From the IMG/VR virus record IMGVR_UViG_3300023278_002893, positions 186,001 through 250,000 of that record: a DNA stretch of 64,000 nt, one strand, 5' to 3'. The notes below the pieces were generated by a model. The model ran no database searches and was not told the DNA's origin. It saw nothing but the letters and a program-made list of their open reading frames with translations. The position numbers were made by a program, and so were the translations under genes. Positions 4,005 to 64,000 of the stretch are shown piece by piece. Numbering within the stretch: the first letter of the stretch is position 1; each line of letters starts with the position of its first letter.

Positions 4005-4262
4005 TTATGCTTGTGATATTGGGGATTCCGGCGCGCAAAGGCCTAAGTTATTTAAAATAAATCCCTCAGGGCACTCAAGAGTGCCTACCGGTTCAGCCCC
4101 CTCCACATTAGTAATAGGGATACAAGAACCCGATTTCGGATCAAAGACTTCCTCAGGTCTACACTGCGGATGGAACTCCTGAGGATCAGTTATCTGACTT
4201 TTGTCAGACCATCCTCTTAGGATTTTCCCAAGTTGGCCGCGATGATCTGGCGAGCATGCCAC
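4005..4262 (-). CDS. Cys-repeat ORF, probable -1 frameshift extension of 4217..6559
   Basis: Two further repeats (CRPEEVFDPKSGSC, CPEGFILNNLGLC); lies in the -1 frame after G GGA AAA. Confidence 0.6.
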   Translation of the reverse strand: MACSPDHRGQLGKILRGWSDKSQITDPQEFHPQCRPEEVFDPKSGSCIPITNVEGAEPVGTLECPEGFILNNLGLCAPESPISQA

Positions 4263-6559
4263 AAAAGATGTTCCTGAGCATCAGCGACTGCCTGGTCTGC
4301 ATACCCATCTATCTTAGACGACCTGGCCAATGCATTTCGCAATCTTGCAACATCCACAGATGCGGTATCGTAAGAATCCTCTACATCTGGGGTATGGTGC
4401 ATTAGATTACGTCGAGTATGTCCGACTAGGGAAGGAGGAAAAGCCTCGTTGGGTAGGTCCTTAGCGGCTACCTTGGACTTCTCCTTGTTTCCTTCCTCTG
4501 TCTCGTTTAGAATAACATCAAGAGCAGAGATTATCTTAGCAAGAGACATGTTACCCACAGTGTCTCCTACCGAGGCAGTGTTTCCTGGATTTTGAGGGCT
4601 GGAACCAGCAGGGCGACTTTTGTCCATGCTGTCCAGTGGGCGACAAATTTTATTCTTAGCATCCCAAATAGTGTCCTTAGGACAATCACTGGGGAGATTA
4701 AGTTTGCCAGCTGGAGCATCAACCAGTCCTTCTCTGTTTCCTGGGTTGGCATCAGCACTCTCATCTTCCGACTTACCCTTAAACGCACCCTTACGAGGCA
4801 TGCACTTTTTGGTAACAGGGTTCACGAACTGTCCCTCAGGACAACCAGGACCTCCCTTGTTACCCGGACCAGACGTGGTAGTCTGAGCCTCGTCCTCGGC
4901 GGACTTGGCTTTCTTCTTTTTCTTATTGTCTTTCTTGTCGTCTTTCTTATCTCCGTCTTTGCCCTTTTTCTTATCCAACATCTTCTGGATGAAGGGAGGT
5001 ATGAATGCATCTTCCTCACTGGACTTCGTATTCTTACTGGAGTCTAGAGGATCACAATCTTGCTTATCCGCATTCCAGATAGTACCCTTAGGGCAATCCT
5101 GAGGCAGTCTAGCAGGTCTTCCCTCAGGCAAGGGAGTGATGTCTCTCTTAGCTGCTTTGCTAGTATCCATTTCGATGCACTTACGTGCACCGAAGTTGTA
5201 CATCTGGCCGGGAGGACACTGGAAATTAACAGGGTCTCTTCGACCCTCAGGCTGAACAGCCTGCTCTGTCTTGACAGCATCGTAAAATCCCTGCACCTTA
5301 GAGCAATTCTTAGACTCGGAACTCCATTCCATTCCAGGAGGGCAGGGTCCTTGATTTACCTCAGAAGACTGCTCCTTCTCATAGGAAGACATCCTCGCCG
5401 CAACAATCTCCTCACGAATAGGACGCATTAGGTCATTGATTACTTCAGCAAAATCTAAAGAAGTTTCAGCCTTAGCAAAATTATTGACCTCAATCTCACA
5501 TGCCTTGGCACGTGCTAGAATCTTTCGTCTAAGTGATGCCTTCTCTGAGGAGGAGAGACCCTTCGCCTGGTTGAATCTGGACATCGCGTTTCTAACACGA
5601 GCGCAGGTGTCTAACGGAAACTTCCTCTTTCCAGGAACACCGAACGCACTGTCAGGCAGAGCATTACGCTGAGCGGATTTAATGGGCGCTGCAGACTCAT
5701 TACCTACCAAACTAGGAGAATCAACTGCGGTCGGGTCGTCGCCATACTCATAAACTTCCTGAGGAAGTGCGTGTCCAAAGTGCTGGGACTTATATCCCTT
5801 ACCAGAAAACTCCTCAACTATATAACCAGCTACATCGTGAGAATGTACCTCGTCCCCATAACCCTCGACGGAAGTCTTACCATTACCAGACGCATCTAGT
5901 GTTACTAGATGGGTGTGGCCGTGAAGGGGATCGGGGGAAGTCATAGCAACCTTACCACTCAGATAACGTGCCAGCTCCTGCTTCTCATCCTCAGTAAGTG
6001 CTGCGGATGACATCAGGGTGTCCTTGTTTAGAGGGATACACTGCCTAAGCTTAAAATCAAAAAGCTGCTTAGGGGGGCACTGGAAATTAACAGTGTCTCG
6101 GCGGCCCTCAGGATCCATATTAACAATCTCCTGATGTCCCCCAGTTCCTGGAGCAGCTGCTTCTTCTACTACATACTCGTTAGCCTCAGTCATTGCAAAC
6201 TCATCGCTAGTCTCAGACTCTGCTTCTTCCAGAGTAACACATCGTCTCTGGATAAAAGAAAAAGTCGTGCCCGCTGAGCACGACTCCGGTTCATCCATAT
6301 CATCTGCGTCAATTGCGACCTCGGTCTGGGACAGAACCTCCACAGACGCGGTACCTCGCCACTCAGGGCCGTGATCAACATTCACACTTCGGCTCTCCAA
6401 CGTGTGATCAATGCTGCCCATGGGAAGACATCGACCACTTGCAGGATCCTTACGATGTCCTTCGGGACAGTCTTCGTTCAACTCAATAGCGAACTCTCTC
6501 ATCTCTGTAAGAAAATCTAAAGGATTATTTCCCTCGTTTGATTTATTATTGTCGGTCAT
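4217..6559 (-). CDS. Head-module protein with eight C-x12-C repeats, a His-rich motif and two DUF6582-like segments
   Basis: Repeats such as CPEGHRKDPASGRC and CPKGTIWNADKQDC; HGHTH...HSHDV; LPDSAF..RKFPL..VRNAMSRF and LPNEAF..LRNALAR. Confidence 0.75.
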   Translation of the reverse strand: MTDNNKSNEGNNPLDFLTEMREFAIELNEDCPEGHRKDPASGRCLPMGSIDHTLESRSVNVDHGPEWRGTASVEVLSQTEVAIDADDMDEPESCSAGTTFSFIQRRCVTLEEAESETSDEFAMTEANEYVVEEAAAPGTGGHQEIVNMDPEGRRDTVNFQCPPKQLFDFKLRQCIPLNKDTLMSSAALTEDEKQELARYLSGKVAMTSPDPLHGHTHLVTLDASGNGKTSVEGYGDEVHSHDVAGYIVEEFSGKGYKSQHFGHALPQEVYEYGDDPTAVDSPSLVGNESAAPIKSAQRNALPDSAFGVPGKRKFPLDTCARVRNAMSRFNQAKGLSSSEKASLRRKILARAKACEIEVNNFAKAETSLDFAEVINDLMRPIREEIVAARMSSYEKEQSSEVNQGPCPPGMEWSSESKNCSKVQGFYDAVKTEQAVQPEGRRDPVNFQCPPGQMYNFGARKCIEMDTSKAAKRDITPLPEGRPARLPQDCPKGTIWNADKQDCDPLDSSKNTKSSEEDAFIPPFIQKMLDKKKGKDGDKKDDKKDNKKKKKAKSAEDEAQTTTSGPGNKGGPGCPEGQFVNPVTKKCMPRKGAFKGKSEDESADANPGNREGLVDAPAGKLNLPSDCPKDTIWDAKNKICRPLDSMDKSRPAGSSPQNPGNTASVGDTVGNMSLAKIISALDVILNETEEGNKEKSKVAAKDLPNEAFPPSLVGHTRRNLMHHTPDVEDSYDTASVDVARLRNALARSSKIDGYADQAVADAQEHLLWHARQIIAANLGKS

Positions 6560-57920: not shown

Positions 57921-58107
57921 TGTAACCCCTATAATAGTAGGGTGTGGTAAAACCACTTATATAAGGCTAATAGTGAGGTAATACAGATACTTATACCTCC
58001 AAGCCAATAACCTAGGTTCCAGGATTTCTCACATATATAACACTCCTCTCCGAGCCAATGGATAAGGATCAGCCAGAGCAGAGACACCGCTATGAGCGCC
58101 AGATAAA

Positions 58108-58326
58108 TCAATCTTCTATGTCCTCGTCCAGTTCGTCCGAGGTCACACCGACCAGGAGACGAATGGCCTCGAATAGATTTTTCAAATCGGTGGAAGAAAC
58201 ATATCCCTCCCAGATTTTATACTTGTTCCAGTAAAGACTGGATCTTCCCCTTCTGTCAGTATGTAGTTCGTACATTAACTGCTCCTTAATGGTCCAAGAA
58301 CTTTCATGTTCTGTGCGATCAGCCAC
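58108..58326 (-). CDS. Hypothetical protein
   Basis: ORF track. Confidence 0.4.
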   Translation of the reverse strand: MADRTEHESSWTIKEQLMYELHTDRRGRSSLYWNKYKIWEGYVSSTDLKNLFEAIRLLVGVTSDELDEDIED

Positions 58327-58583
58327 TCCCCGCCTTGGCTGTTCGGTCTCTTGAAACTAACGAAGTCGCGGATCTCAACTTTGTACCACACCCTACCTTT
58401 CGTCGAGAGGTGAGGGGCGCTCGGTTCGCGACCAGCGTGCCAACCGGGACGGTGCGCAAAGCCTTTTGTTGGAATGTCCTCAGCGGGGAGCCACACCCCG
58501 ATCGGGATCCGTTGTCGTGTTCCGATGAACAGAGGCCCGATGGTACCGTCCTTGCGTTGTTTAAACAATTTGTAAGCTTTCAT
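58275..58583 (-). CDS. Phage hypothetical protein (AYKLF...PLFI...GFA.RPGWH)
   Basis: RBS GAGGAG before ATG 58583. Confidence 0.65.
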   Translation of the reverse strand: MKAYKLFKQRKDGTIGPLFIGTRQRIPIGVWLPAEDIPTKGFAHRPGWHAGREPSAPHLSTKGRVWYKVEIRDFVSFKRPNSQGGEWLIAQNMKVLGPLRSS

Positions 58584-58599
58584 CTTTCTCCTCAAACCA

Positions 58600-58628
58600 A
58601 TAATACGAGAAGTGTTCCCCCGTGTCAA
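58600..58628 (-). promoter_or_regulatory. sigma70-type promoter
   Basis: TTGACA-17-TATTAT. Confidence 0.8.
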
Positions 58629-58700
58629 GCACTATCTTCCCCTTTTCACTCGGGGTGGTTTATGATCTATATAGTGGCAAAGAAAGTGATTCCAACGAGA

Positions 58701-58729
58701 ATAATAAGAGAGAATAGAGAGGATGTCAA
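58701..58729 (-). promoter_or_regulatory. sigma70-type promoter
   Basis: TTGACA-17-TATTAT. Confidence 0.8.
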
Positions 58730-58987
58730 ATAAATGACTAGGAGGTCAATATACATCTTCCCCCTTGAGATATAATGGGAGATAATATTGCCTTAGGGAC
58801 CCTAGCATAGTTACCTCACCTTGTGAGGTAATCATTGTTTATACCCCCCTCCTCCGTCGAGGGATATACACATTGATTAACTATGCTACACGCGCTACCA
58901 CTTGTTACCTCACTGCGTGAGCTAATAATTCTCGCTTCGCTCGAATTAGACATGTCGTCTACTTCCAGCAAGCTGAAAGGAGACACC

Positions 58988-59026
58988 ATGTCACGACACG
59001 GAGGTCGCAAGCTCCCTCGTCACTGA
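58988..59026 (+). CDS. 12-aa micropeptide MSRHGGRKLPRH
   Basis: RBS GAAAGGAG 5 nt before ATG. Confidence 0.4.
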   Translation: MSRHGGRKLPRH

Positions 59027-59089
59027 GCTTGTCTAACGCAGCACTCATGCTGCACCGCACGGAGAGCTACGCTCTACCGTGCAGGAGGT

Positions 59090-59284
59090 ATGACTATGTC
59101 ATCCCCCACGCTCGTGCTCCGTGTTCCGACCTGCGACGCTGTCGATTGCATCGACCCCAGCGCAGGGTGCTACCCCGCACTCGATGTCTTCGAAGATATC
59201 GAGCTGTGCGTACATCACGAGAGTGAGTACGCCACTGCGGGTCGCATCAATGAGAGCGATCGACTCGTCGATCACTCTTCCTGA
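59090..59284 (+). CDS. Small Cys/His acidic protein
   Basis: RBS AGGAGGT; followed by a G/C hairpin. Confidence 0.6.
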   Translation: MTMSSPTLVLRVPTCDAVDCIDPSAGCYPALDVFEDIELCVHHESEYATAGRINESDRLVDHSS

Positions 59285-59454
59285 TGCTTGGGGACCCCCC
59301 TCTGGGGGGTCCCTGTGGTTACCTCTCCGAGGTACCCTTCTATCCCTCGCTTCGCTCGGGTACCCCATCACCACGTGGATCTCGCTGCGCGAGCCCTAGT
59401 TGCATCACTTCGTGATACAATCATTTCTCGCTTATCACTCGAAAGGAGTATGAC

Positions 59455-59628
59455 ATGCCCAGTCTCGTCTTCGACTTTGACTGTTCCTGTGAGGTCCTCC
59501 CTTCGGGGGACCTCTGGTGCTGCGATGTGTGCAGCACCGAAGCTGACCCTTGGGGTCAGCTTGCTACCGAAGAATCCGATCGGATTCTCGGACACAACAC
59601 CTTCCTCGATATCTCTCGAAAGGAGTAG
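59455..59628 (+). CDS. 57-aa Cys-rich protein MPSLVFDFDCSCEVLPSGDLWCCDVC... (not in track)
   Basis: RBS GAAAGGAG 6 nt upstream; its 3' end supplies the RBS of the next gene. Confidence 0.6.
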   Translation: MPSLVFDFDCSCEVLPSGDLWCCDVCSTEADPWGQLATEESDRILGHNTFLDISRKE

Positions 59629-59631
59629 ATC

Positions 59632-59754
59632 ATGCTCGAACAATTCGCTATCGCTCTTGTCCCCACCATCGCGTTGCTCTTGGTGGGTCGCTTGATCTGG
59701 ATCACCGATCCAGAGGTCAAGCGACTGCGCAAAGCTGAGCAGAAGCTCAGCTAG
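59632..59754 (+). CDS. 40-aa single-TM protein MLEQFAIALVPTIALLLVGRLIWIT... (not in track)
   Basis: RBS GAAAGGAG; hydrophobic helix and basic tail. Confidence 0.6.
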   Translation: MLEQFAIALVPTIALLLVGRLIWITDPEVKRLRKAEQKLS

Positions 59755-59760
59755 CGCATC

Positions 59761-59789
59761 GGACCCCCCTAACGGGGGGTCCTCTTTTT
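59761..59789 (+). terminator. Intrinsic terminator-like hairpin
   Basis: GGACCCCCC-TAAC-GGGGGGTCC followed by TCTTTTT. Confidence 0.7.
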
Positions 59790-59954
59790 ACAGCACCGAC
59801 CCGCTTCGCTAAGTCGGTCTTGTTCATTTACTCGTGAGTACCCCCTTCGGGGGTACCAACGAGCACCGCTCGTTCCTCGCTCTCGTCGTTCCTCCTCACT
59901 AGTTGCATCACTTTGTGATACAATCATTTCTCGCTATCGCTCGAAAGGAGATCC

Positions 59955-60185
59955 ATGTTTATCATTCTTCTCGATTCCTCGAAGAACGAACTCCGCGTCG
60001 TCCGTGCTGACTCTGTCAGCGACTCCGGGACGCGGGTCGTTGTGGTTCCTCACCACAACGGTCACTCGTACGACTTCGAACTCCCTCCGGGAGTCGAAGC
60101 CTTCGCAGACCTCGCTACCTTCGACGATGTCGAAGCTGCGTGGTCGTCGGTTCGCACCGACTTCTGCCCCTCGCTCCACCCCTAG
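59955..60185 (+). CDS. Small hypothetical protein
   Basis: RBS GAAAGGAG after a repeat module. Confidence 0.65.
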   Translation: MFIILLDSSKNELRVVRADSVSDSGTRVVVVPHHNGHSYDFELPPGVEAFADLATFDDVEAAWSSVRTDFCPSLHP

Positions 60186-60304
60186 CGGGGTGGGGTGTCC
60201 CCCTTCGGGGGTAGTTACCTCACTCTGTGAGGTAATACTTCTCTGGGTACTAGCGTACCCTTTGAAGTATTATCTTTCTCGTTAATCTCTCGAAAGGAGA
60301 CTCT

Positions 60305-60784
60305 ATGCGTTGCTCGTTCTGTAACGATCCCCGTGGGATCATCATGGTTGATGGTATCCCCGAGCCCTGCTGTGATGAGATCATCACGCAGCAAGTCCGC
60401 GAAGTACGCGGCATCTGTGTCAATTGTGGGGAATCCCACACTCGCATGAACGAGGGTGTAGACACCCTCTCCGCCATGTGCTCCGATGAGTGCCTCACCG
60501 AAGCCATGGATCGCATCGAAGCAATCGCGCTGCGCGACGATTGTGGCGGTGAGATGCCCGACCAGGAGGTCATGGACCTCCATGACTCCGTCGATCGTAT
60601 CGACGCAGCCAACCTCGCGTGGTACCGCCACGCGGGTCAGTACATCGACAACGGTGTCGATGACTGTCTCGGTACTCCTCCCTTCTGGTTGGAGTACTCG
60701 ATAGAGCGCGACGCTCTGGAGAGCGATGCACGCATCGCTAAGCTCCAGAACGACGAGCACAAGTACGGGTGTATCCCGTTCTAG
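60305..60784 (+). CDS. Acidic Cys-rich (zinc-binding) hypothetical protein
   Basis: CSFC..CC..CVNC..CSDEC; RBS GAAAGGAG. Confidence 0.7.
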   Translation: MRCSFCNDPRGIIMVDGIPEPCCDEIITQQVREVRGICVNCGESHTRMNEGVDTLSAMCSDECLTEAMDRIEAIALRDDCGGEMPDQEVMDLHDSVDRIDAANLAWYRHAGQYIDNGVDDCLGTPPFWLEYSIERDALESDARIAKLQNDEHKYGCIPF

Positions 60785-60869
60785 TGCTCTGGTCCCCCTA
60801 GCGGGGGACCTACCGCTCCGCTCTCGCTTCGCTCACTAGTTCCTCCACTTCGTGAAGGAGGTCACTCAC

Positions 60870-60944
60870 ATGACCAAGTTGATCCTGTGCACCTACGCTC
60901 CGCTGCTCTACTTGCTTGCGGAATTCGCTTCACTCATCCCTTAA
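60870..60944 (+). CDS. 24-aa hydrophobic peptide MTKLILCTYAPLLYLLAEFASLIP
   Basis: RBS AAGGAGGT. Confidence 0.5.
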   Translation: MTKLILCTYAPLLYLLAEFASLIP

Positions 60945-60962
60945 CCAAGAAGGAGCTACGCT

Positions 60963-61016
60963 ATGGATGATCTCGACCGCGACATCCAGGACGTCATTGA
61001 CGACCTGTGCGAATAG
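60963..61016 (+). CDS. 17-aa acidic peptide MDDLDRDIQDVIDDLCE
   Basis: RBS AAGGAG 7 nt upstream. Confidence 0.45.
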   Translation: MDDLDRDIQDVIDDLCE

Positions 61017-61524
61017 ACCCATGTGGGTAGGAGTGCGTTACCGCGCACTCCTGCCCACCCGCTTCGCTCGCTACGCTCGCTCGCTCCTCTAAGAGCAAGG
61101 GAGGACTCTGTTGAGTCCTACTCCAGTACCGCTCGTCCCTCGCTCTCGCTTCGCTCACTCCCCTTCGGGGATAGTCCCATCACTTCGTGATCGGTAGTAC
61201 ATTTTTTTCGCTCATCGCTCAAAAAGGAGTCCTCCATTGGATGGATGACACCCCACAGCTACCTGCCCGAGCACGGCTTGGTAGCACCACGGGGGCCGTA
61301 GTGCTCCCTCCGCTGCGAGACGCAGTACAAGCAGTGACCTGCTTGTGGCGGAGGTTGATCAGCTCGCTTCGCTCGCTAACGGATGCTCCGCATCCTTAGA
61401 GACCCGGAGCGTCCCCCCTACGGGGGGTAGTTTCACCGCTGCGCGATGAAGTATCGGTTCTTGCGAACCTCGTTGTTAGACCACAGTGGTCTGATGCAGG
61501 GTTCGCTTGATAGGAGGACATGAC

Positions 61525-61881
61525 ATGTCCAATGCAGTAAAGACCACGATCAAGAAGTTTTCGTTCACGAAGTGGATCAGTGAGATCGAAGGTTCGGGTG
61601 CTCGCGTACTCGGATTCTGTGAGATGACGGTCTGCGTCGATGGTCTGGAGTTCACGTTCAGTGACCTGAAGGTTCGCGTGAATCAGAAGGGTGAGCATCA
61701 CCTGTGCGCACCGAGTCGTCGCTACAAGAACTCCGAAGGTGCCTGGAGGACGTCGAGCGCGTACAAGTTCGACAATTCGACGTATGCTGCTCTGCGCAGT
61801 TTCGTCTACGGTCGCGACGAAGTGAAGGTCGCGATCGACGAAGCCGCGGATCTCGAAAAGGAGATTCCGCTGAGCGCGTAG
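61525..61881 (+). CDS. SpoVG-like nucleic-acid-binding protein
   Basis: GFCEMTV...FTFSDLKV....GEHHLCAPSRRYK..EG.W matches the SpoVG pattern; RBS AGGAGG. Confidence 0.7.
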   Translation: MSNAVKTTIKKFSFTKWISEIEGSGARVLGFCEMTVCVDGLEFTFSDLKVRVNQKGEHHLCAPSRRYKNSEGAWRTSSAYKFDNSTYAALRSFVYGRDEVKVAIDEAADLEKEIPLSA

Positions 61882-62104
61882 TACATAGCAGTACCTCTAA
61901 GTAGGGGTACTGCTAGTCCCACCCCACCGCTTCCCGGGGGGTGGGACCTCGCTCTCTTTCTGCTATCACGCGTGCTCATTGAGAAATGAAGGACTCTGAT
62001 GAGTCCTCCTTTATTGACGTTCGCTTCGCTCTCTCTCAGTTCCTCCGCTTCGCTCCCCCCTTCGCTATAGTCTCCGCATTCTCTGGATGCGGTTACTATT
62101 ATAA

Positions 62105-62134
62105 GAGACCCTCTAACGAGGAGTCTCTTTTTTT
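62105..62134 (+). terminator. Intrinsic terminator-like hairpin
   Basis: GAGACCCTC-TAAC-GAGGAGTCTC followed by a T7 run. Confidence 0.65.
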
Positions 62135-62497
62135 ATTGACGCGCGCTGTTGCTCGGTGGATTCGTTCGGTACTGTTCATTCGGTGGTTGATTCGTTTACT
62201 CTCATTTGTTAGGGCACCACCCCAGTAGACGAAACTAATTACGGAGATATCAATTCCTTACGGAAACGCTGATTTACTCGTCGTCGCTGTGCTCCTCGTT
62301 GTTCCTTCTTTTTTTGATCTTTCATCTCGGTGCACCATTCGTAGAGATATCTATGGATGCACGCCCGTCGGATACGTAAGTACTTGCAATACTCCGACAG
62401 TGCTTTATCGATACGTCTAGGTAGTTCCTAGCGGACGAGATGGGAGATCTTTTTTCGCGGCCGCTCAAAAAAGCCTATTACAAGGAGATTAGAAACA

Positions 62498-62628
62498 TGG
62501 AACACATCCTCAAGAAGATGGCTGTACCCAACATCTTGCACTGCGCAGAACTAGTGGTTCTGACCATCGTCGTGCATTTGGCCTCAGGATTGGTATTCTT
62601 ACCATTATTCATCCCGAGGCAAGAATAA
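62498..62628 (+). CDS. Small membrane peptide MEHILKKMAV... (start approximate)
   Basis: RBS AAGGAG; hydrophobic C-half. Confidence 0.45.
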
Positions 62629-63516
62629 ACCCAACCCCGAAGAAGATAGGAGATCAAACCCATGTTCTACACAATACTACTAATGGTACTGAAAGAATAC
62701 AAGGACAGCAACAATCCATTCACCTGAGAGACCCCTCAGTTGAGTTAGACCACCCAGGAGGGATGGGACACTGGTAGGTGGTGGTCAGCTTTTACCAGGC
62801 GGTGACATCATTTTGCTCGGCGGACAAATCAATAGTAATTTCAAATAGATAGAGTAAATATGTAGGGCTCTGACGTTACTACAGTAGGGGGTTTCGCGCG
62901 TCCCTGTCCAGGTGACTCATTCATTAGGAGATCGATCTCTGGGTGAAACCCTTCTGTATTGCTTCTTACGAATTATTCACTATACTCAGAATTTTCACCC
63001 GCCGGATAAAACACCCAATATCACCCTGTACTCAAACTGAATAAGGCTAGAACCCCCCTAGACAAGAAGAACTCCAGTAGTGCCCTCTGTTAGAGCCAAT
63101 TGTATTACTGCTTTAGCAGATTCATTGCAAGCATGGTGATGATTTACCTGTTGTACTCCCAGTATGCCTCTGTATCGATCCATGCTCATCGATCGATGTA
63201 GTTGATTTCATTGAGGAATTTAGTGTAGTGAAATGGTAAATGCCAATAGGTCGATCAAGTGGGTGTGATCGAGTACCCCGTATTAGTTGAATAGGTCGGT
63301 CTGTGTTGGTGCTTTGGCACCCCATGAGGGGTCTAGGTTGTTCCTTCATTTTGATGTTCTGTGCTCCCATGTGCTTGGTTTCGTTGATGATTGGAGCCGG
63401 GGGTGGAGTGTGAGGGGAACGTGTAGGAGAAGCGAAGTGTGAGCGTCTCAGGTACCACCTGTGAGAGCTAGTGAGTACAGAGGAGAGTTAATCCATTACC
63501 GGTTTCTACCGGGAAC

Positions 63517-63834
63517 ATGCCTATTAGAGGCGGGAGAACTATTATGTTGGAGAAGAGACAGCCGAGAGGAAAGACAATAAGATGCTGGAGCAGGAACGGT
63601 GAGCCCCTCGATCCCGGTGCAGAACTCCACATGGAGCTGTTAAAACTAGAACACGTGTACTGGCGCAATGAGCTGACAGCGTGCGACGATTGCGGCACAG
63701 CTATACCCAATCGCGATCTTCGACTTACTCCATATGGATTGGTATGTGAGGATTGCAGAGAGACCGTCAAGAAGACAAGAATCAACTTGGGTAGGTTTCT
63801 ACGTAAATGGGAACCTAGCGGAGAGGCATGCTAG
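63517..63834 (+). CDS. Zinc-ribbon hypothetical protein
   Basis: CDDCG...CEDC. Confidence 0.55.
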   Translation: MPIRGGRTIMLEKRQPRGKTIRCWSRNGEPLDPGAELHMELLKLEHVYWRNELTACDDCGTAIPNRDLRLTPYGLVCEDCRETVKKTRINLGRFLRKWEPSGEAC

Positions 63835-64000
63835 ACTGTTTTATCCGCCGCTGAAAAATGCCAATAACCCTGGGAGGGGAAAGGAGAGAATCATGGACAG
63901 AACACTACTGGAAGCATCTGGACTGGCCTGTCATCGTAGTACCTGTGAGGAGCAGGCTCAATGGGAAGGCTACGCTGACACCTACAGGCCTATTACAGGA

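What the first reader, a model, noticed from the sequence alone, without database searches (positions are those of the whole stretch)
58808..61450. Conserved TAGTT linker at the foot of each gene-proximal hairpin: candidate initiation site
Seen: TAGTT (variants TAGTC, TGGTT, TTGTT) directly precedes a hairpin of variable sequence about nine times (TTACCTCAC-nnn-GTGAGGTAA, GCATCAC-nnn-GTGATAC, TCCTCCAC-TTC-GTGAAGGA, TTCACCGC-TGC-GCGATGAA). It usually follows another hairpin and precedes an AGGAG RBS. Established: DnaG on the G4 origin starts pppAG at template 5'-CTG beside a hairpin, and Firmicute primases prefer 5'-CTA. Here the bottom strand reads hairpin-AA-CTA. Inference: the module could be a primase/ssi-like signal, a phage-RNAP promoter or a nicking site. 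Two copies also contain an extended -10-like TGaTACAAT, so host RNAP use is possible.
Basis: partly seen in the sequence, partly recalled or inferred. Interest (0 to 1): 0.7.

Follow-up and report, generated by a model that had tools for sequence, protein, structure and literature searches.

The report
Hairpin-linked start signals before phage genes
A short conserved sequence, (G)T-A/T-G-T-C/T, followed at once by a small hairpin, is repeated in front of the first rightward genes of an uncultured 298-kb phage and its relatives; it is most likely a phage-specific transcription-start and leader signal rather than a DNA-priming site.

Summary
Eight strong copies lie at window 58808-61449, plus one weaker copy at 59316. 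All are on the + strand and sit 33-97 nt upstream of a start codon. A degenerate pattern gives 7 hits against 0.18 expected.

A covariance model finds 11 copies in the 297,725-bp phage genome, all on the + strand, all at genome 244.8-276.8 kb. Four or five related metagenomic phages carry the element at orthologous positions. Their stems differ by compensatory changes. The linker is nearly invariant: T1 25/25, G3 23/25, T4 25/25. The loop is always 3 nt.

A more distant relative has GTAGTYNCTC, 13 forward and 1 reverse, upstream of genes. There the pyrimidine tract pairs with the ribosome-binding site.

Rightward sigma-70-like promoters are lacking, while leftward ones are canonical. Canonical terminators precede some copies. 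The phage encodes a fused beta-beta' RNA-polymerase-like protein and a sigma factor.

Best reading: a compact phage-specific promoter or initiator whose transcript begins with a 5' hairpin. RNA processing and an N4-like DNA-hairpin promoter remain open. A primase site is unlikely. No RNA data could be obtained.

The parts
58808..58831 (+). P copy 1: linker TAGTT plus a 9-bp stem and 3-nt loop. It is the first element of the rightward block. A conserved GGGACCC lies 8 nt upstream and a conserved TTTATACCCCC lies downstream.
   Evidence: orthologous copies with compensatory stem changes in G003, L219, L213 and L216
58902..58923 (+). P copy 2: linker TTGTT plus a 7-bp stem with one C.C mismatch. 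The CTCGCTTCGCTCG tract follows after 7 nt, then the ribosome-binding site and the ATG at 58988.
   Evidence: the only copy that passes the sigma-70 scan (TTGTTA-16-AATAAT)
59316..59333 (+). Weaker P-like copy: TGGTT plus a 5-6-bp stem and 3-nt loop, followed by a CGCTTCGCTC tract.
59397..59418 (+). P copy: TAGTT plus a 7-bp stem with one C.A mismatch. The 3' arm gives TGATACAAT. The ATG is at 59455.
59900..59921 (+). P copy, a near-duplicate of the 59397 cassette. It lies 118 nt after a canonical terminator (59761-59782 plus a T run). The ATG is at 59955.
60212..60235 (+). P copy: TAGTT plus a 9-bp stem, abutting a C(TTCG)G hairpin. The ATG is at 60305. Its 3' arm overlaps a longer alternative leader hairpin (60230-60275).
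60837..60858 (+). P copy whose 3' arm is the GAAGGAGG ribosome-binding site of a 24-codon ORF (60870-60944).
61172..61193 (+). P copy: TAGTC, where the last linker base covaries with its partner. It abuts a C(TTCG)G-type hairpin. The ATG is at 61241.
61428..61449 (+). P copy upstream of the SpoVG-like gene (ATG at 61525). The 97-nt leader has further conserved helices.
   Evidence: orthologous copies in L219, L216 and L217 have different stems
58933..58942 (+). One of eight CGCTTCGCTC tracts; the others start at 59348, 60825, 61060, 61147, 61365, 62022 and 62046. These are pyrimidine-rich tracts found only in this 3.1-kb region and only on the + strand. They often lie between a P hairpin and the ribosome-binding site.
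   Evidence: 8 forward, 0 reverse, none elsewhere in 298 kb
59761..59790 (+). Canonical intrinsic-terminator-like hairpin with a T run, downstream of the 59632-59754 ORF.
58600..58729 (-). Two near-consensus sigma-70-like promoters (TTGACA-17-TATTAT) that point leftwards, away from the P cluster.
   Evidence: the TTGACA of one is conserved in five phages
61525..61881 (+). 118-aa protein with a SpoVG-like predicted fold. It is the last gene of the P cluster. Paralogues lie further right, one of them behind P copy g252666.

Best explanation
Each copy is a compact, phage-specific transcription-start and leader module for the first rightward genes, which look like early or host-takeover genes.

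The proposed mechanism has three steps.
1. An RNA polymerase other than the plain host sigma-70 holoenzyme starts at or next to the conserved (G)T-W-G-T-Y, probably at the invariant G. The candidate enzymes are the phage's fused beta-beta' enzyme, or host core redirected by a phage factor. A consensus of 4-5 bp that overlaps the start is known for the phiKZ non-virion polymerase.
2. The first ~20 nt of the RNA then fold into a 6-9-bp triloop hairpin. One arm is pyrimidine-rich (CCUC-type) and the other is purine-rich (GAGG-type).
3. This hairpin caps the 5' end. In copy 60837, and in the distant relative G001, it occludes the ribosome-binding site.

Shown: the motif, its strand and position bias, covariation of the stem, invariance of the linker, orthologous conservation, the lack of sigma-70-like rightward promoters, terminators upstream of some copies, and the presence of polymerase-like and sigma genes.

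Inferred: that RNA 5' ends lie at the linker, which enzyme makes them, and what the hairpin does.
For: 1. Distribution. There are 11 copies, all on the + strand and all in genome 244.8-276.8 kb. Eight lie in the first 2.7 kb of the rightward block. All are intergenic and 33-112 nt upstream of a start codon.

2. Conservation. 25 curated copies from 6 phage records show T1 25/25, G3 23/25, T4 25/25 and G at -1 in 18/25. The loop is always 3 nt. Stems differ among orthologous copies with full compensation.

3. Promoter context. No rightward sigma-70-like promoter lies in the cluster apart from a weak match at 58902. By contrast, 17 near-consensus ones point leftward on the other strand, two of them immediately left of copy 1.

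4. Terminators. A canonical terminator precedes copy 59900. In G001, two strong terminators (stem plus T8-T9) are each followed by a TAGTTGCTC before the next gene, with no sigma-70-like promoter between them.

5. The G001 motif. GTAGTYNCTC is 13 forward, 1 reverse and 3/3 for the control. Copies lie 16-36 nt from ribosome-binding sites, and one lies only 29 nt from the ATG. The conserved core must therefore sit at or near the RNA start, not at -35.

6. Orthology. G000 copy g252666 and G001 site 36540 both precede homologous genes and share TWGTT plus CTCGCT..CGCTCG. Only G000 has the tight hairpin.

7. RNA-level pairing. In G001 the tract after the linker pairs with the ribosome-binding site and includes G.U pairs. 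The SpoVG-like leader has conserved helices with G.U pairs.

8. Enzymes. The phage encodes a 1054-aa beta-beta'-like protein and a sigma factor.

9. Precedent. phiKZ non-virion polymerase promoters have a 4-5-bp consensus that overlaps the start.
Against: - No RNA evidence exists. No sequencing run could be listed, so no 5' end has been observed.
- Nothing is conserved upstream of the linker, which is unusual for sigma-dependent enzymes.
- Three copies abut tetraloop hairpins that lack T runs. Read-through RNA would carry a hairpin, a single-stranded linker and a second hairpin, which is the classic context of an endonuclease site.
- Within the arms, mismatches are C.A six times and T.G never. 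That would fit pairing on the bottom strand rather than in the mRNA. At the stem base the opposite holds, with T.G six times.
- The G001-type motif is not enriched in G000.
- The polymerase-like gene lies about 80 kb downstream in the same block. If it is the enzyme, it would have to be carried in the virion or made first from another promoter.
Confidence: 0.45

Rival explanations
1. Intercistronic RNA-processing site. A host or phage endoribonuclease cuts the single-stranded (G)UWGUY between two hairpins of a long early transcript. The upstream RNA keeps a 3' hairpin and the downstream RNA gains a 5' hairpin, and both ends are protected.
For: - The hairpin-linker-hairpin layout occurs at 60212, 61172 and 61428, and at copy 2 in 4 of 5 phages.
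- The upstream hairpins carry RNA-type UUCG or UACG tetraloops and lack T runs.
- A perfect TATAAT lies 37 nt upstream of copy 1 and could feed a long transcript.
Against: - Copies 1 and 2 are in tandem with no gene between them in five phages.
- Canonical terminators precede copy 59900 and the G001 motifs, so a new start is needed there.
- Near-invariance of three linker bases is tighter than the loose specificity of RNase E or RNase Y, as recalled from established knowledge and not tested here.
Confidence: 0.2
2. N4-like DNA-hairpin promoter. Supercoiling extrudes the inverted repeat. A polymerase recognises the template-strand (bottom-strand) hairpin together with the linker, and starts a few nt downstream of the stem.
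For: - The loop is invariably 3 nt and the stem is 5-9 bp.
- Bottom-strand loops are GAA 10, GGA 3 and GCA 2, so G-N-A accounts for 15 of 25. The closing pair is C:G in 20 of 25.
- N4 promoters need a template-strand 5'-G-R-A-3' triloop closed by C:G.
- C.A mismatches on the top strand become G.T on the bottom strand.
- The tetraloop hairpins in the same region use RNA-type loops, in contrast to these triloops.
Against: - No sequence is conserved downstream of the stem where the start would lie.
- Loops of orthologous copy 1 on the bottom strand include AAG, TCA and AGA.
- In copy 60837 a start downstream of the stem would leave out the ribosome-binding site.
- The distant relative keeps the linker motif without tight hairpins, with loops of 4-26 nt.
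- No T7/N4-type polymerase was detected. That search was weak, because its control rang nowhere, and the large proteins had no family hits.
Confidence: 0.1
3. Ordinary host-polymerase promoters. T(T/A)GT(C/T)N acts as a weak -35, the hairpin lies in the 16-nt spacer, and a -10 follows the stem. Cruciform extrusion might modulate activity.
For: - Copy 2 reads TTGTCA or TTGTTA at the -35 position. TTGTCA matches 5 of 6 in G003 and L216.
- Five window copies have AATCAT, AATAAT or AATACT 16 nt after the hexamer.
- Orthologues of copy 1 have TACTAT or TACTGT there.
- Two copies have TGATACAAT.
Against: - Only one copy passes the scan.
- Copies 60837, g252666 and g273281, the SpoVG-gene orthologues and the 6-bp-stem copies have no -10 at any sensible spacing.
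- Leftward promoters in the same phage are near-consensus, so a weak, odd form used only for the rightward cluster would need explaining.
- Stem covariation is not explained by this reading.
Confidence: 0.1
4. Purely post-transcriptional leader element. It would be a translational operator or decoy ribosome-binding-site hairpin, bound by a phage protein or by ribosomes, and would not define an RNA end.
For: - 3' arms contain GAGG or GGAG in 14 of 25 copies, and 5' arms are CCUC-like.
- Copy 60837 and the G001 copies sequester the real ribosome-binding site.
- The leader has alternative pairings.
Against: It does not explain the invariant linker, the tandem copies 1 and 2 with no gene between them, or the need for promoters after terminators.
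Confidence: 0.08
5. DNA-level initiation or cleavage site: a primase/ssi signal, a nick site, or a REP-like GTAG-plus-palindrome element.
For: - The phage encodes a DnaG-type primase.
- The bottom strand reads hairpin-RA-CTA in 15 of 25 copies, and the top strand carries G-T-Y.
- GTAG precedes the stem in 10 of 25 copies, as in REP elements (recalled from established knowledge, not tested).
Against: - All copies are co-oriented with and upstream of genes, and orthologously fixed.
- The CTA triplet is CAA in 9 copies and AAA in 2 of the 25.
- There is no Y1 transposase and no dispersed high-copy family. The genome has 11 copies, all in one region.
Confidence: 0.05

Closest known systems
phiKZ non-virion RNA polymerase late promoters (TATG overlapping the start)
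   Same: Both have a very short conserved core of 4-6 nt with no conserved upstream element, in a large phage that encodes a beta/beta'-type polymerase.
   Different: - The sequence is T-W-G-T-Y, not TATG.
- A covarying hairpin follows immediately.
- The polymerase-like protein here is a single fused 1054-aa chain, not four or five split subunits.
- The start site has not been mapped.
Phage N4 virion-polymerase early promoters (DNA hairpin)
   Same: - Both have a stem of 5-7 bp or slightly more and a 3-nt loop.
- The template-strand loop is often G-N-A closed by C:G.
- Both are clustered at the head of the early region.
- Stem bases vary but pairing is kept.
   Different: - The conserved single-stranded piece lies upstream of the hairpin, not between the hairpin and the start.
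- No start-site bases are conserved.
- No N4-type polymerase was found.
- The distant relative lacks tight hairpins.
Early-promoter motifs of jumbo phages with virion polymerases (phiKZ, AR9)
   Same: [quoted passage not shown]
   Different: The known motifs are AT-rich, about 10 nt long, centred near -10, and have no hairpin. This one is not AT-rich and is defined by a hairpin.
5'-terminal stem-loops that stabilise bacterial and phage mRNAs
   Same: In both, the hairpin starts within 0-2 nt of the putative 5' end. That is the geometry such stabilisers need (established knowledge, not tested here).
   Different: Here the hairpin is coupled to a conserved initiator-like sequence and is reused as a repeated cassette.
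G4-type single-strand initiation sites for DnaG primase
   Same: Both have a trinucleotide next to a hairpin on the template strand, with RNA synthesis running into the hairpin.
   Different: The copies here follow genes rather than an origin, the triplet varies at the would-be first nucleotide, and 25 copies are conserved as gene leaders.

Membership tests
N4-type hairpin promoter | Inverted repeat giving a 5-7-bp stem and a 3-nt loop | tested here: met
   All 25 copies have a 3-nt loop, with stems of 5-9 bp.
N4-type hairpin promoter | Template-strand loop 5'-G-R-A-3' closed by 5'C:G3' | tested here: inconclusive
   G-N-A occurs in 15 of 25 copies and a C:G closing pair in 20 of 25. The other loops are AGA, AAA, AAG and TCA.
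N4-type hairpin promoter | Conserved bases from the hairpin to +1, with the start 11 nt after the loop centre | tested here: not met
   No column downstream of the stem is conserved. The start site itself cannot be tested.
N4-type hairpin promoter | A giant virion polymerase of the T7-like family is encoded | tested here: inconclusive
   PF00940 gave no hit, but its control rang nowhere. The 2631-aa and 2208-aa proteins have no family hits.
Sigma-70-type promoter | -35 and -10 hexamers 16-18 nt apart | tested here: not met
   One of eight copies passes (58902, 9 of 12). Leftward promoters in the same region score 11 of 12.
Jumbo-phage virion-polymerase early promoter | AT-rich conserved block of about 10 nt centred near -10 | tested here: not met
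   The motif is T-W-G-T-Y plus a G+C-containing hairpin.
phiKZ-type start-overlapping promoter | Consensus of 4-5 bp that overlaps the start site | not testable with these tools
   A short consensus is present. The start site is unknown because no RNA runs were listed.
G4-type primase/ssi site | Fixed primase trinucleotide beside a hairpin in an origin context | tested here: not met
   The bottom-strand triplet is CTA in 15 copies, CAA in 9 and CCA in 1. All copies are gene-proximal leaders.
REP element with RAYT | GTAG or GTGG head plus palindrome, many dispersed copies, and a Y1 transposase | tested here: not met
   GTAG occurs in 10 of 25 copies. There are only 11 copies, all in one region, and there is no PF01797 hit.
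Intrinsic terminator | G+C-rich hairpin followed by a T run | tested here: not met
   Only copy 58808 is weakly flagged. The other P hairpins have no T run.
Any Rfam family | A match to a curated covariance model | tested here: not met
   No match at E up to 1 over window 58000-64000.

The most novel reading that the evidence does not exclude
The hairpins are extruded DNA structures on the template strand, recognised together with the T-W-G-T-Y linker by the phage's fused beta-beta' (two-barrel) polymerase. That would be an N4-style structured-DNA promoter used by a polymerase of the cellular type. It would also give the first promoter assignment for a widespread, uncharacterised family of ~1050-aa fused polymerases in huge phages.
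Probability: 0.1. Interest if true: 0.85.

Novelty: new variant of a known kind. Interest (0 to 1): 0.5.

Why it matters
Huge uncultured phages carry a large family of about 1050-aa fused beta-beta' polymerase-like proteins. The search returned 240 relatives at E up to 1e-5, and the named ones are all 'hypothetical protein'. Their promoters are unknown.

This element is a defined, covarying, orthologously conserved candidate signal at the head of the rightward, early-looking gene block. That gives a concrete template for in-vitro transcription with that enzyme.

If the hairpin acts as DNA, it would extend structured-DNA promoters beyond N4-like phages. If it acts as RNA, it is a compact start-plus-5'-cap cassette that could be reused in expression design.

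If it proves to be an ordinary processing site, it is still a useful annotation marker for early genes in this phage lineage.

Tried and rejected
- **BLAST of the region against phage records:** no match.
- **Public sequencing runs:** none listed for the 3.5-kb region or for an 830-base stretch within it. No RNA 5' ends could be examined.
- **Degenerate 19-mer scan of viral contigs:** only single chance hits.
- **Exact 18-mer downstream of copy 1:** found the same phage, G003, and one unrelated temperate phage by chance.
- **Small ORFs of the cluster:** no Pfam or PHROG hits.
- **TAGTT alone:** not enriched in intergenic DNA.
- **Degenerate RTAGTYNC:** too common to mean anything, 89 forward against 66 reverse.
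- **G001-type GTAGTYNCTC in G000:** not enriched.
- **Deciding which strand folds from the mismatch types:** ambiguous. Inside the arms C.A occurs six times and T.G never; at the stem base T.G occurs six times.
- **Dimeric-protein operator reading of the palindrome:** rejected, because the arms covary instead of keeping a half-site consensus.
- **Lambda-nut-like boxA/boxB reading of hairpin plus CGCTTCGCTC:** considered and dropped. Spacing and order vary, and eight copies in 2.6 kb do not fit.
- **Tiny ORF after copy 1 (TTG start):** not conserved in relatives.
- **Polymerase-based search for more long relatives in viral contigs:** gave only G001 and one contig that does not reach the region.
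Full report
**Setting**

The window is bases 186001-250000 of a 297,725-bp IMG/VR virus record rated 100% complete. Genes run leftwards from about 243 kb down to 51.5 kb. They run rightwards from about 244.8 kb through the record's end to about 51 kb. The finding (genome 244,808-247,450) is therefore the very start of the rightward block.

That block is richer in G+C, about 51% against about 45%. In the distant relative G001 the contrast is about 60% against 45%.

The phage has:
- a terminase and a 4554-aa tape-measure protein;
- at least 28 tRNA genes and a CCA-adding enzyme;
- a DnaG-type primase;
- a sigma-70-family factor with regions 2 and 4;
- a 1054-aa single chain carrying both the beta (Rpb2_6) and beta' (Rpb1_2) double-psi barrels.

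That polymerase-like chain belongs to a large, unnamed family found on 100-330-kb contigs.

**The observation**

Eight strong copies begin at 58808, 58902, 59397, 59900, 60212, 60837, 61172 and 61428. A weaker one begins at 59316.

All share one geometry: a 5-nt linker, a 7-nt arm, a 3-nt loop and a 7-nt arm. The last linker base usually pairs as well.

- A degenerate pattern finds 7 copies in the window against 0.18 expected.
- In the genome the count is 12 forward and 1 reverse.
- Covariance model R1 finds 11 significant copies, all on the + strand. The three outside the cluster are at genome 252666, 273281 and 276776, and there are none in the other 260 kb.
- Pairing is supported by covariation: 92% of cells paired, four pairs with double changes, and no shuffle reaching the score.

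Each copy is intergenic and lies 33-112 nt upstream of a start codon with a strong ribosome-binding site.

**Relatives**

By terminase, G002 is the same phage. G003 (77% identical) and G004 end at or just after copy 1. G001 (296 kb, 68%) is a complete, more distant relative.

A conserved 55-aa protein lies left of the cluster. Using it as a query retrieved metagenome contigs L213, L216, L217 and L219. All carry the element on the expected strand and side.

Orthologous copies can be recognised: copy 1, copy 2, the copy before the SpoVG-like gene, and a fifth copy. Their stems differ with full compensation. For the SpoVG-gene copy, for example, the arms are TCACCGC/GCGATGA, TCCGCA/TGCGGA and TCCACG/CGTGGA.

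Over the 25 curated copies:
- Linker: T1 25/25; W2 is A 15, T 9, G 1; G3 23/25; T4 25/25; Y5 is C 15, T 10. G precedes the linker in 18/25.
- Loop: always 3 nt. On the top strand it reads T-Y/G-Y, and TTC occurs ten times.
- Arms: the 5' arm is 59% C and the 3' arm is 53% G.

The linker is therefore constrained in sequence and the hairpin is constrained in structure.

**The distant relative**

G000 252.7-272.6 kb is syntenic with G001 36.7-58 kb. The cluster itself has no counterpart in G001.

G001 lacks the tight hairpin. It has TAGTTGCTC six times forward and never reverse. More generally it has GTAGTYNCTC 13 times forward and once reverse, with 3/3 for the control. Ten of these lie in its rightward block. 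Most are 16-36 nt from a ribosome-binding site, and one is only 29 nt from the ATG.

In several of these copies the pyrimidine tract after the linker pairs with the ribosome-binding site itself. The pairings include G.U pairs and have loops of 4-26 nt. Examples are CUCUUC with GAGGAG, and UCUCUC with GAGAGA.

G000 copy g252666 and G001 site 36540 precede homologous genes. They share TWGTT followed by a CTCGCT..CGCTCG tract. The tight hairpin is present only in G000.

The common core is therefore the linker plus a CYC-rich tract. The tight triloop hairpin is a lineage-specific form of a more general pairing.

**Context that bears on function**

Leftward transcription has near-consensus sigma-70-like promoters. 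There are 17 on that strand at 11-12 of 12 matches. Twelve lie between 188 and 244.7 kb, and two lie just left of copy 1. One TTGACA is conserved in five phages.

Rightward, only copy 58902 scores, with 9 of 12.

A canonical terminator at 59761-59782 is followed 118 nt later by copy 59900 and then a gene. In G001 two strong terminators are each followed by a TAGTTGCTC before the next gene, with no sigma-70-like promoter between them.

Other hairpins in the cluster use UUCG or UACG tetraloops and mostly lack T runs.

A second motif, CGCTTCGCTC, occurs eight times. It is found only here and only on the + strand. It usually lies between a P hairpin and the ribosome-binding site. In the SpoVG-like leader it takes part in a conserved long-range helix with G.U pairs that covers the ribosome-binding site.

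**Interpretation**

A new transcription start is needed after the terminators. The only recurrent, oriented, gene-proximal motif available is this one. Its conserved core must lie close to the RNA start, as the 29-nt case in G001 shows.

A 4-6-nt consensus without upstream elements has a precedent in the phiKZ non-virion polymerase.

I therefore favour an initiator-type, phage-specific promoter whose transcript begins with a hairpin within 0-2 nt of its 5' end. That geometry is known to protect mRNA 5' ends (established knowledge, not tested). In one copy, and in G001, the hairpin also masks the ribosome-binding site. Confidence is about 0.45.

**Rivals**

1. *RNA processing.* An endonuclease would cut the single-stranded linker between two hairpins. 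This gives the same 5' end and cannot be separated from a start without RNA data (0.2).

2. *N4-like DNA-hairpin promoter.* The invariant triloop, the bottom-strand G-N-A loops (15 of 25), the C:G closing pair (20 of 25) and the C.A mismatches match N4's rules. Against it, nothing is conserved where the start would be. Copy 60837 would lose its ribosome-binding site. G001 manages without tight hairpins (0.1).

3. *Host promoters with the hairpin in the spacer.* This is plausible for copies 1 and 2 and the 59397 pair. It does not hold generally (0.1).

4. *A purely translational element* (0.08).

5. *Primase, nick or REP-like sites* (0.05). The triplet varies at the would-be first nucleotide, the distribution follows genes, and there is no Y1 enzyme.

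**Comparison with known systems and novelty**

No Rfam family matches. The element differs from jumbo-phage early promoters, which are AT-rich with no hairpin. It differs from N4 promoters in where the conserved single-stranded part lies. It differs from sigma-70 promoters.

I class it as a new variant of a known kind: phage-specific start and leader signals. Its main value is as a concrete candidate promoter for an uncharacterised fused polymerase family.

Noticed in passing
genome 26734-29898 (+), outside the window; locus L199:6734-9898: A 1054-aa single chain carries both the beta (Rpb2_6) and beta' (Rpb1_2) barrel domains. The search returned 240 relatives at E up to 1e-5, and the best listed ones are about 1000-1200 aa. 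They lie on contigs of up to 327 kb, and none has a functional name.
   Followed up: partly
window 61525-61881 (+); paralogues at genome 252759-253328 and 270447-270893: A family of small proteins with a SpoVG-like predicted fold (atlas TM 0.64; Pfam finds nothing). They are repeated in the rightward block and in relatives, and each lies behind a copy of the motif or its G001 equivalent.
   Followed up: partly
window 58933, 59348, 60825, 61060, 61147, 61365, 62022, 62046 (+): CGCTTCGCTC occurs eight times, only in this 3.1 kb and only on the + strand. Related tracts sit just 5' of ribosome-binding sites in relatives. They may be unstructured pyrimidine leaders or pairing partners.
   Followed up: partly
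window 58600-58628 and 58701-58729 (-); genome-wide: Near-consensus TTGACA-17-TATAAT promoters are strongly biased to the leftward strand between genome 188 and 244.7 kb. This suggests that the host polymerase reads that arm.
   Followed up: partly
whole record; G001 36-60 kb: The rightward block is richer in G+C than the leftward block: 51% against 45% here, and 60% against 45% in G001. This compositional split within one phage genome is unexplained.
   Followed up: no
window 60870-60944 (+); G003, G007, L219, L213 and L216 equivalents: A conserved tiny hydrophobic peptide gene, with an ...ASLIP end or an ISLIP start, is the first or an early gene behind the motif in several relatives.
   Followed up: no
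window 4217-6559 (-): A 780-aa protein scores for the chitin-binding Peritrophin-A domain (CBM_14, E 1.3e-15), a domain mostly known from animals and their viruses.
   Followed up: no
genome 274.7-297.7 kb and 1-22.3 kb (+): At least 28 tRNA genes, one with a 4-base anticodon call, plus a CCA-adding enzyme gene at about 44.9-46.4 kb.
   Followed up: no
window 62420-62470 (+); L219 equivalent: A conserved block carries a GCGGCCGC core flanked by T6 and A6 arms. It lies downstream of a TAGTT site and ahead of the gene that starts at 62498.
   Followed up: no
window 60230-60275 (+): A 21-nt-arm leader hairpin overlaps the 3' arm of copy 60212, so the two structures are mutually exclusive.
   Followed up: no
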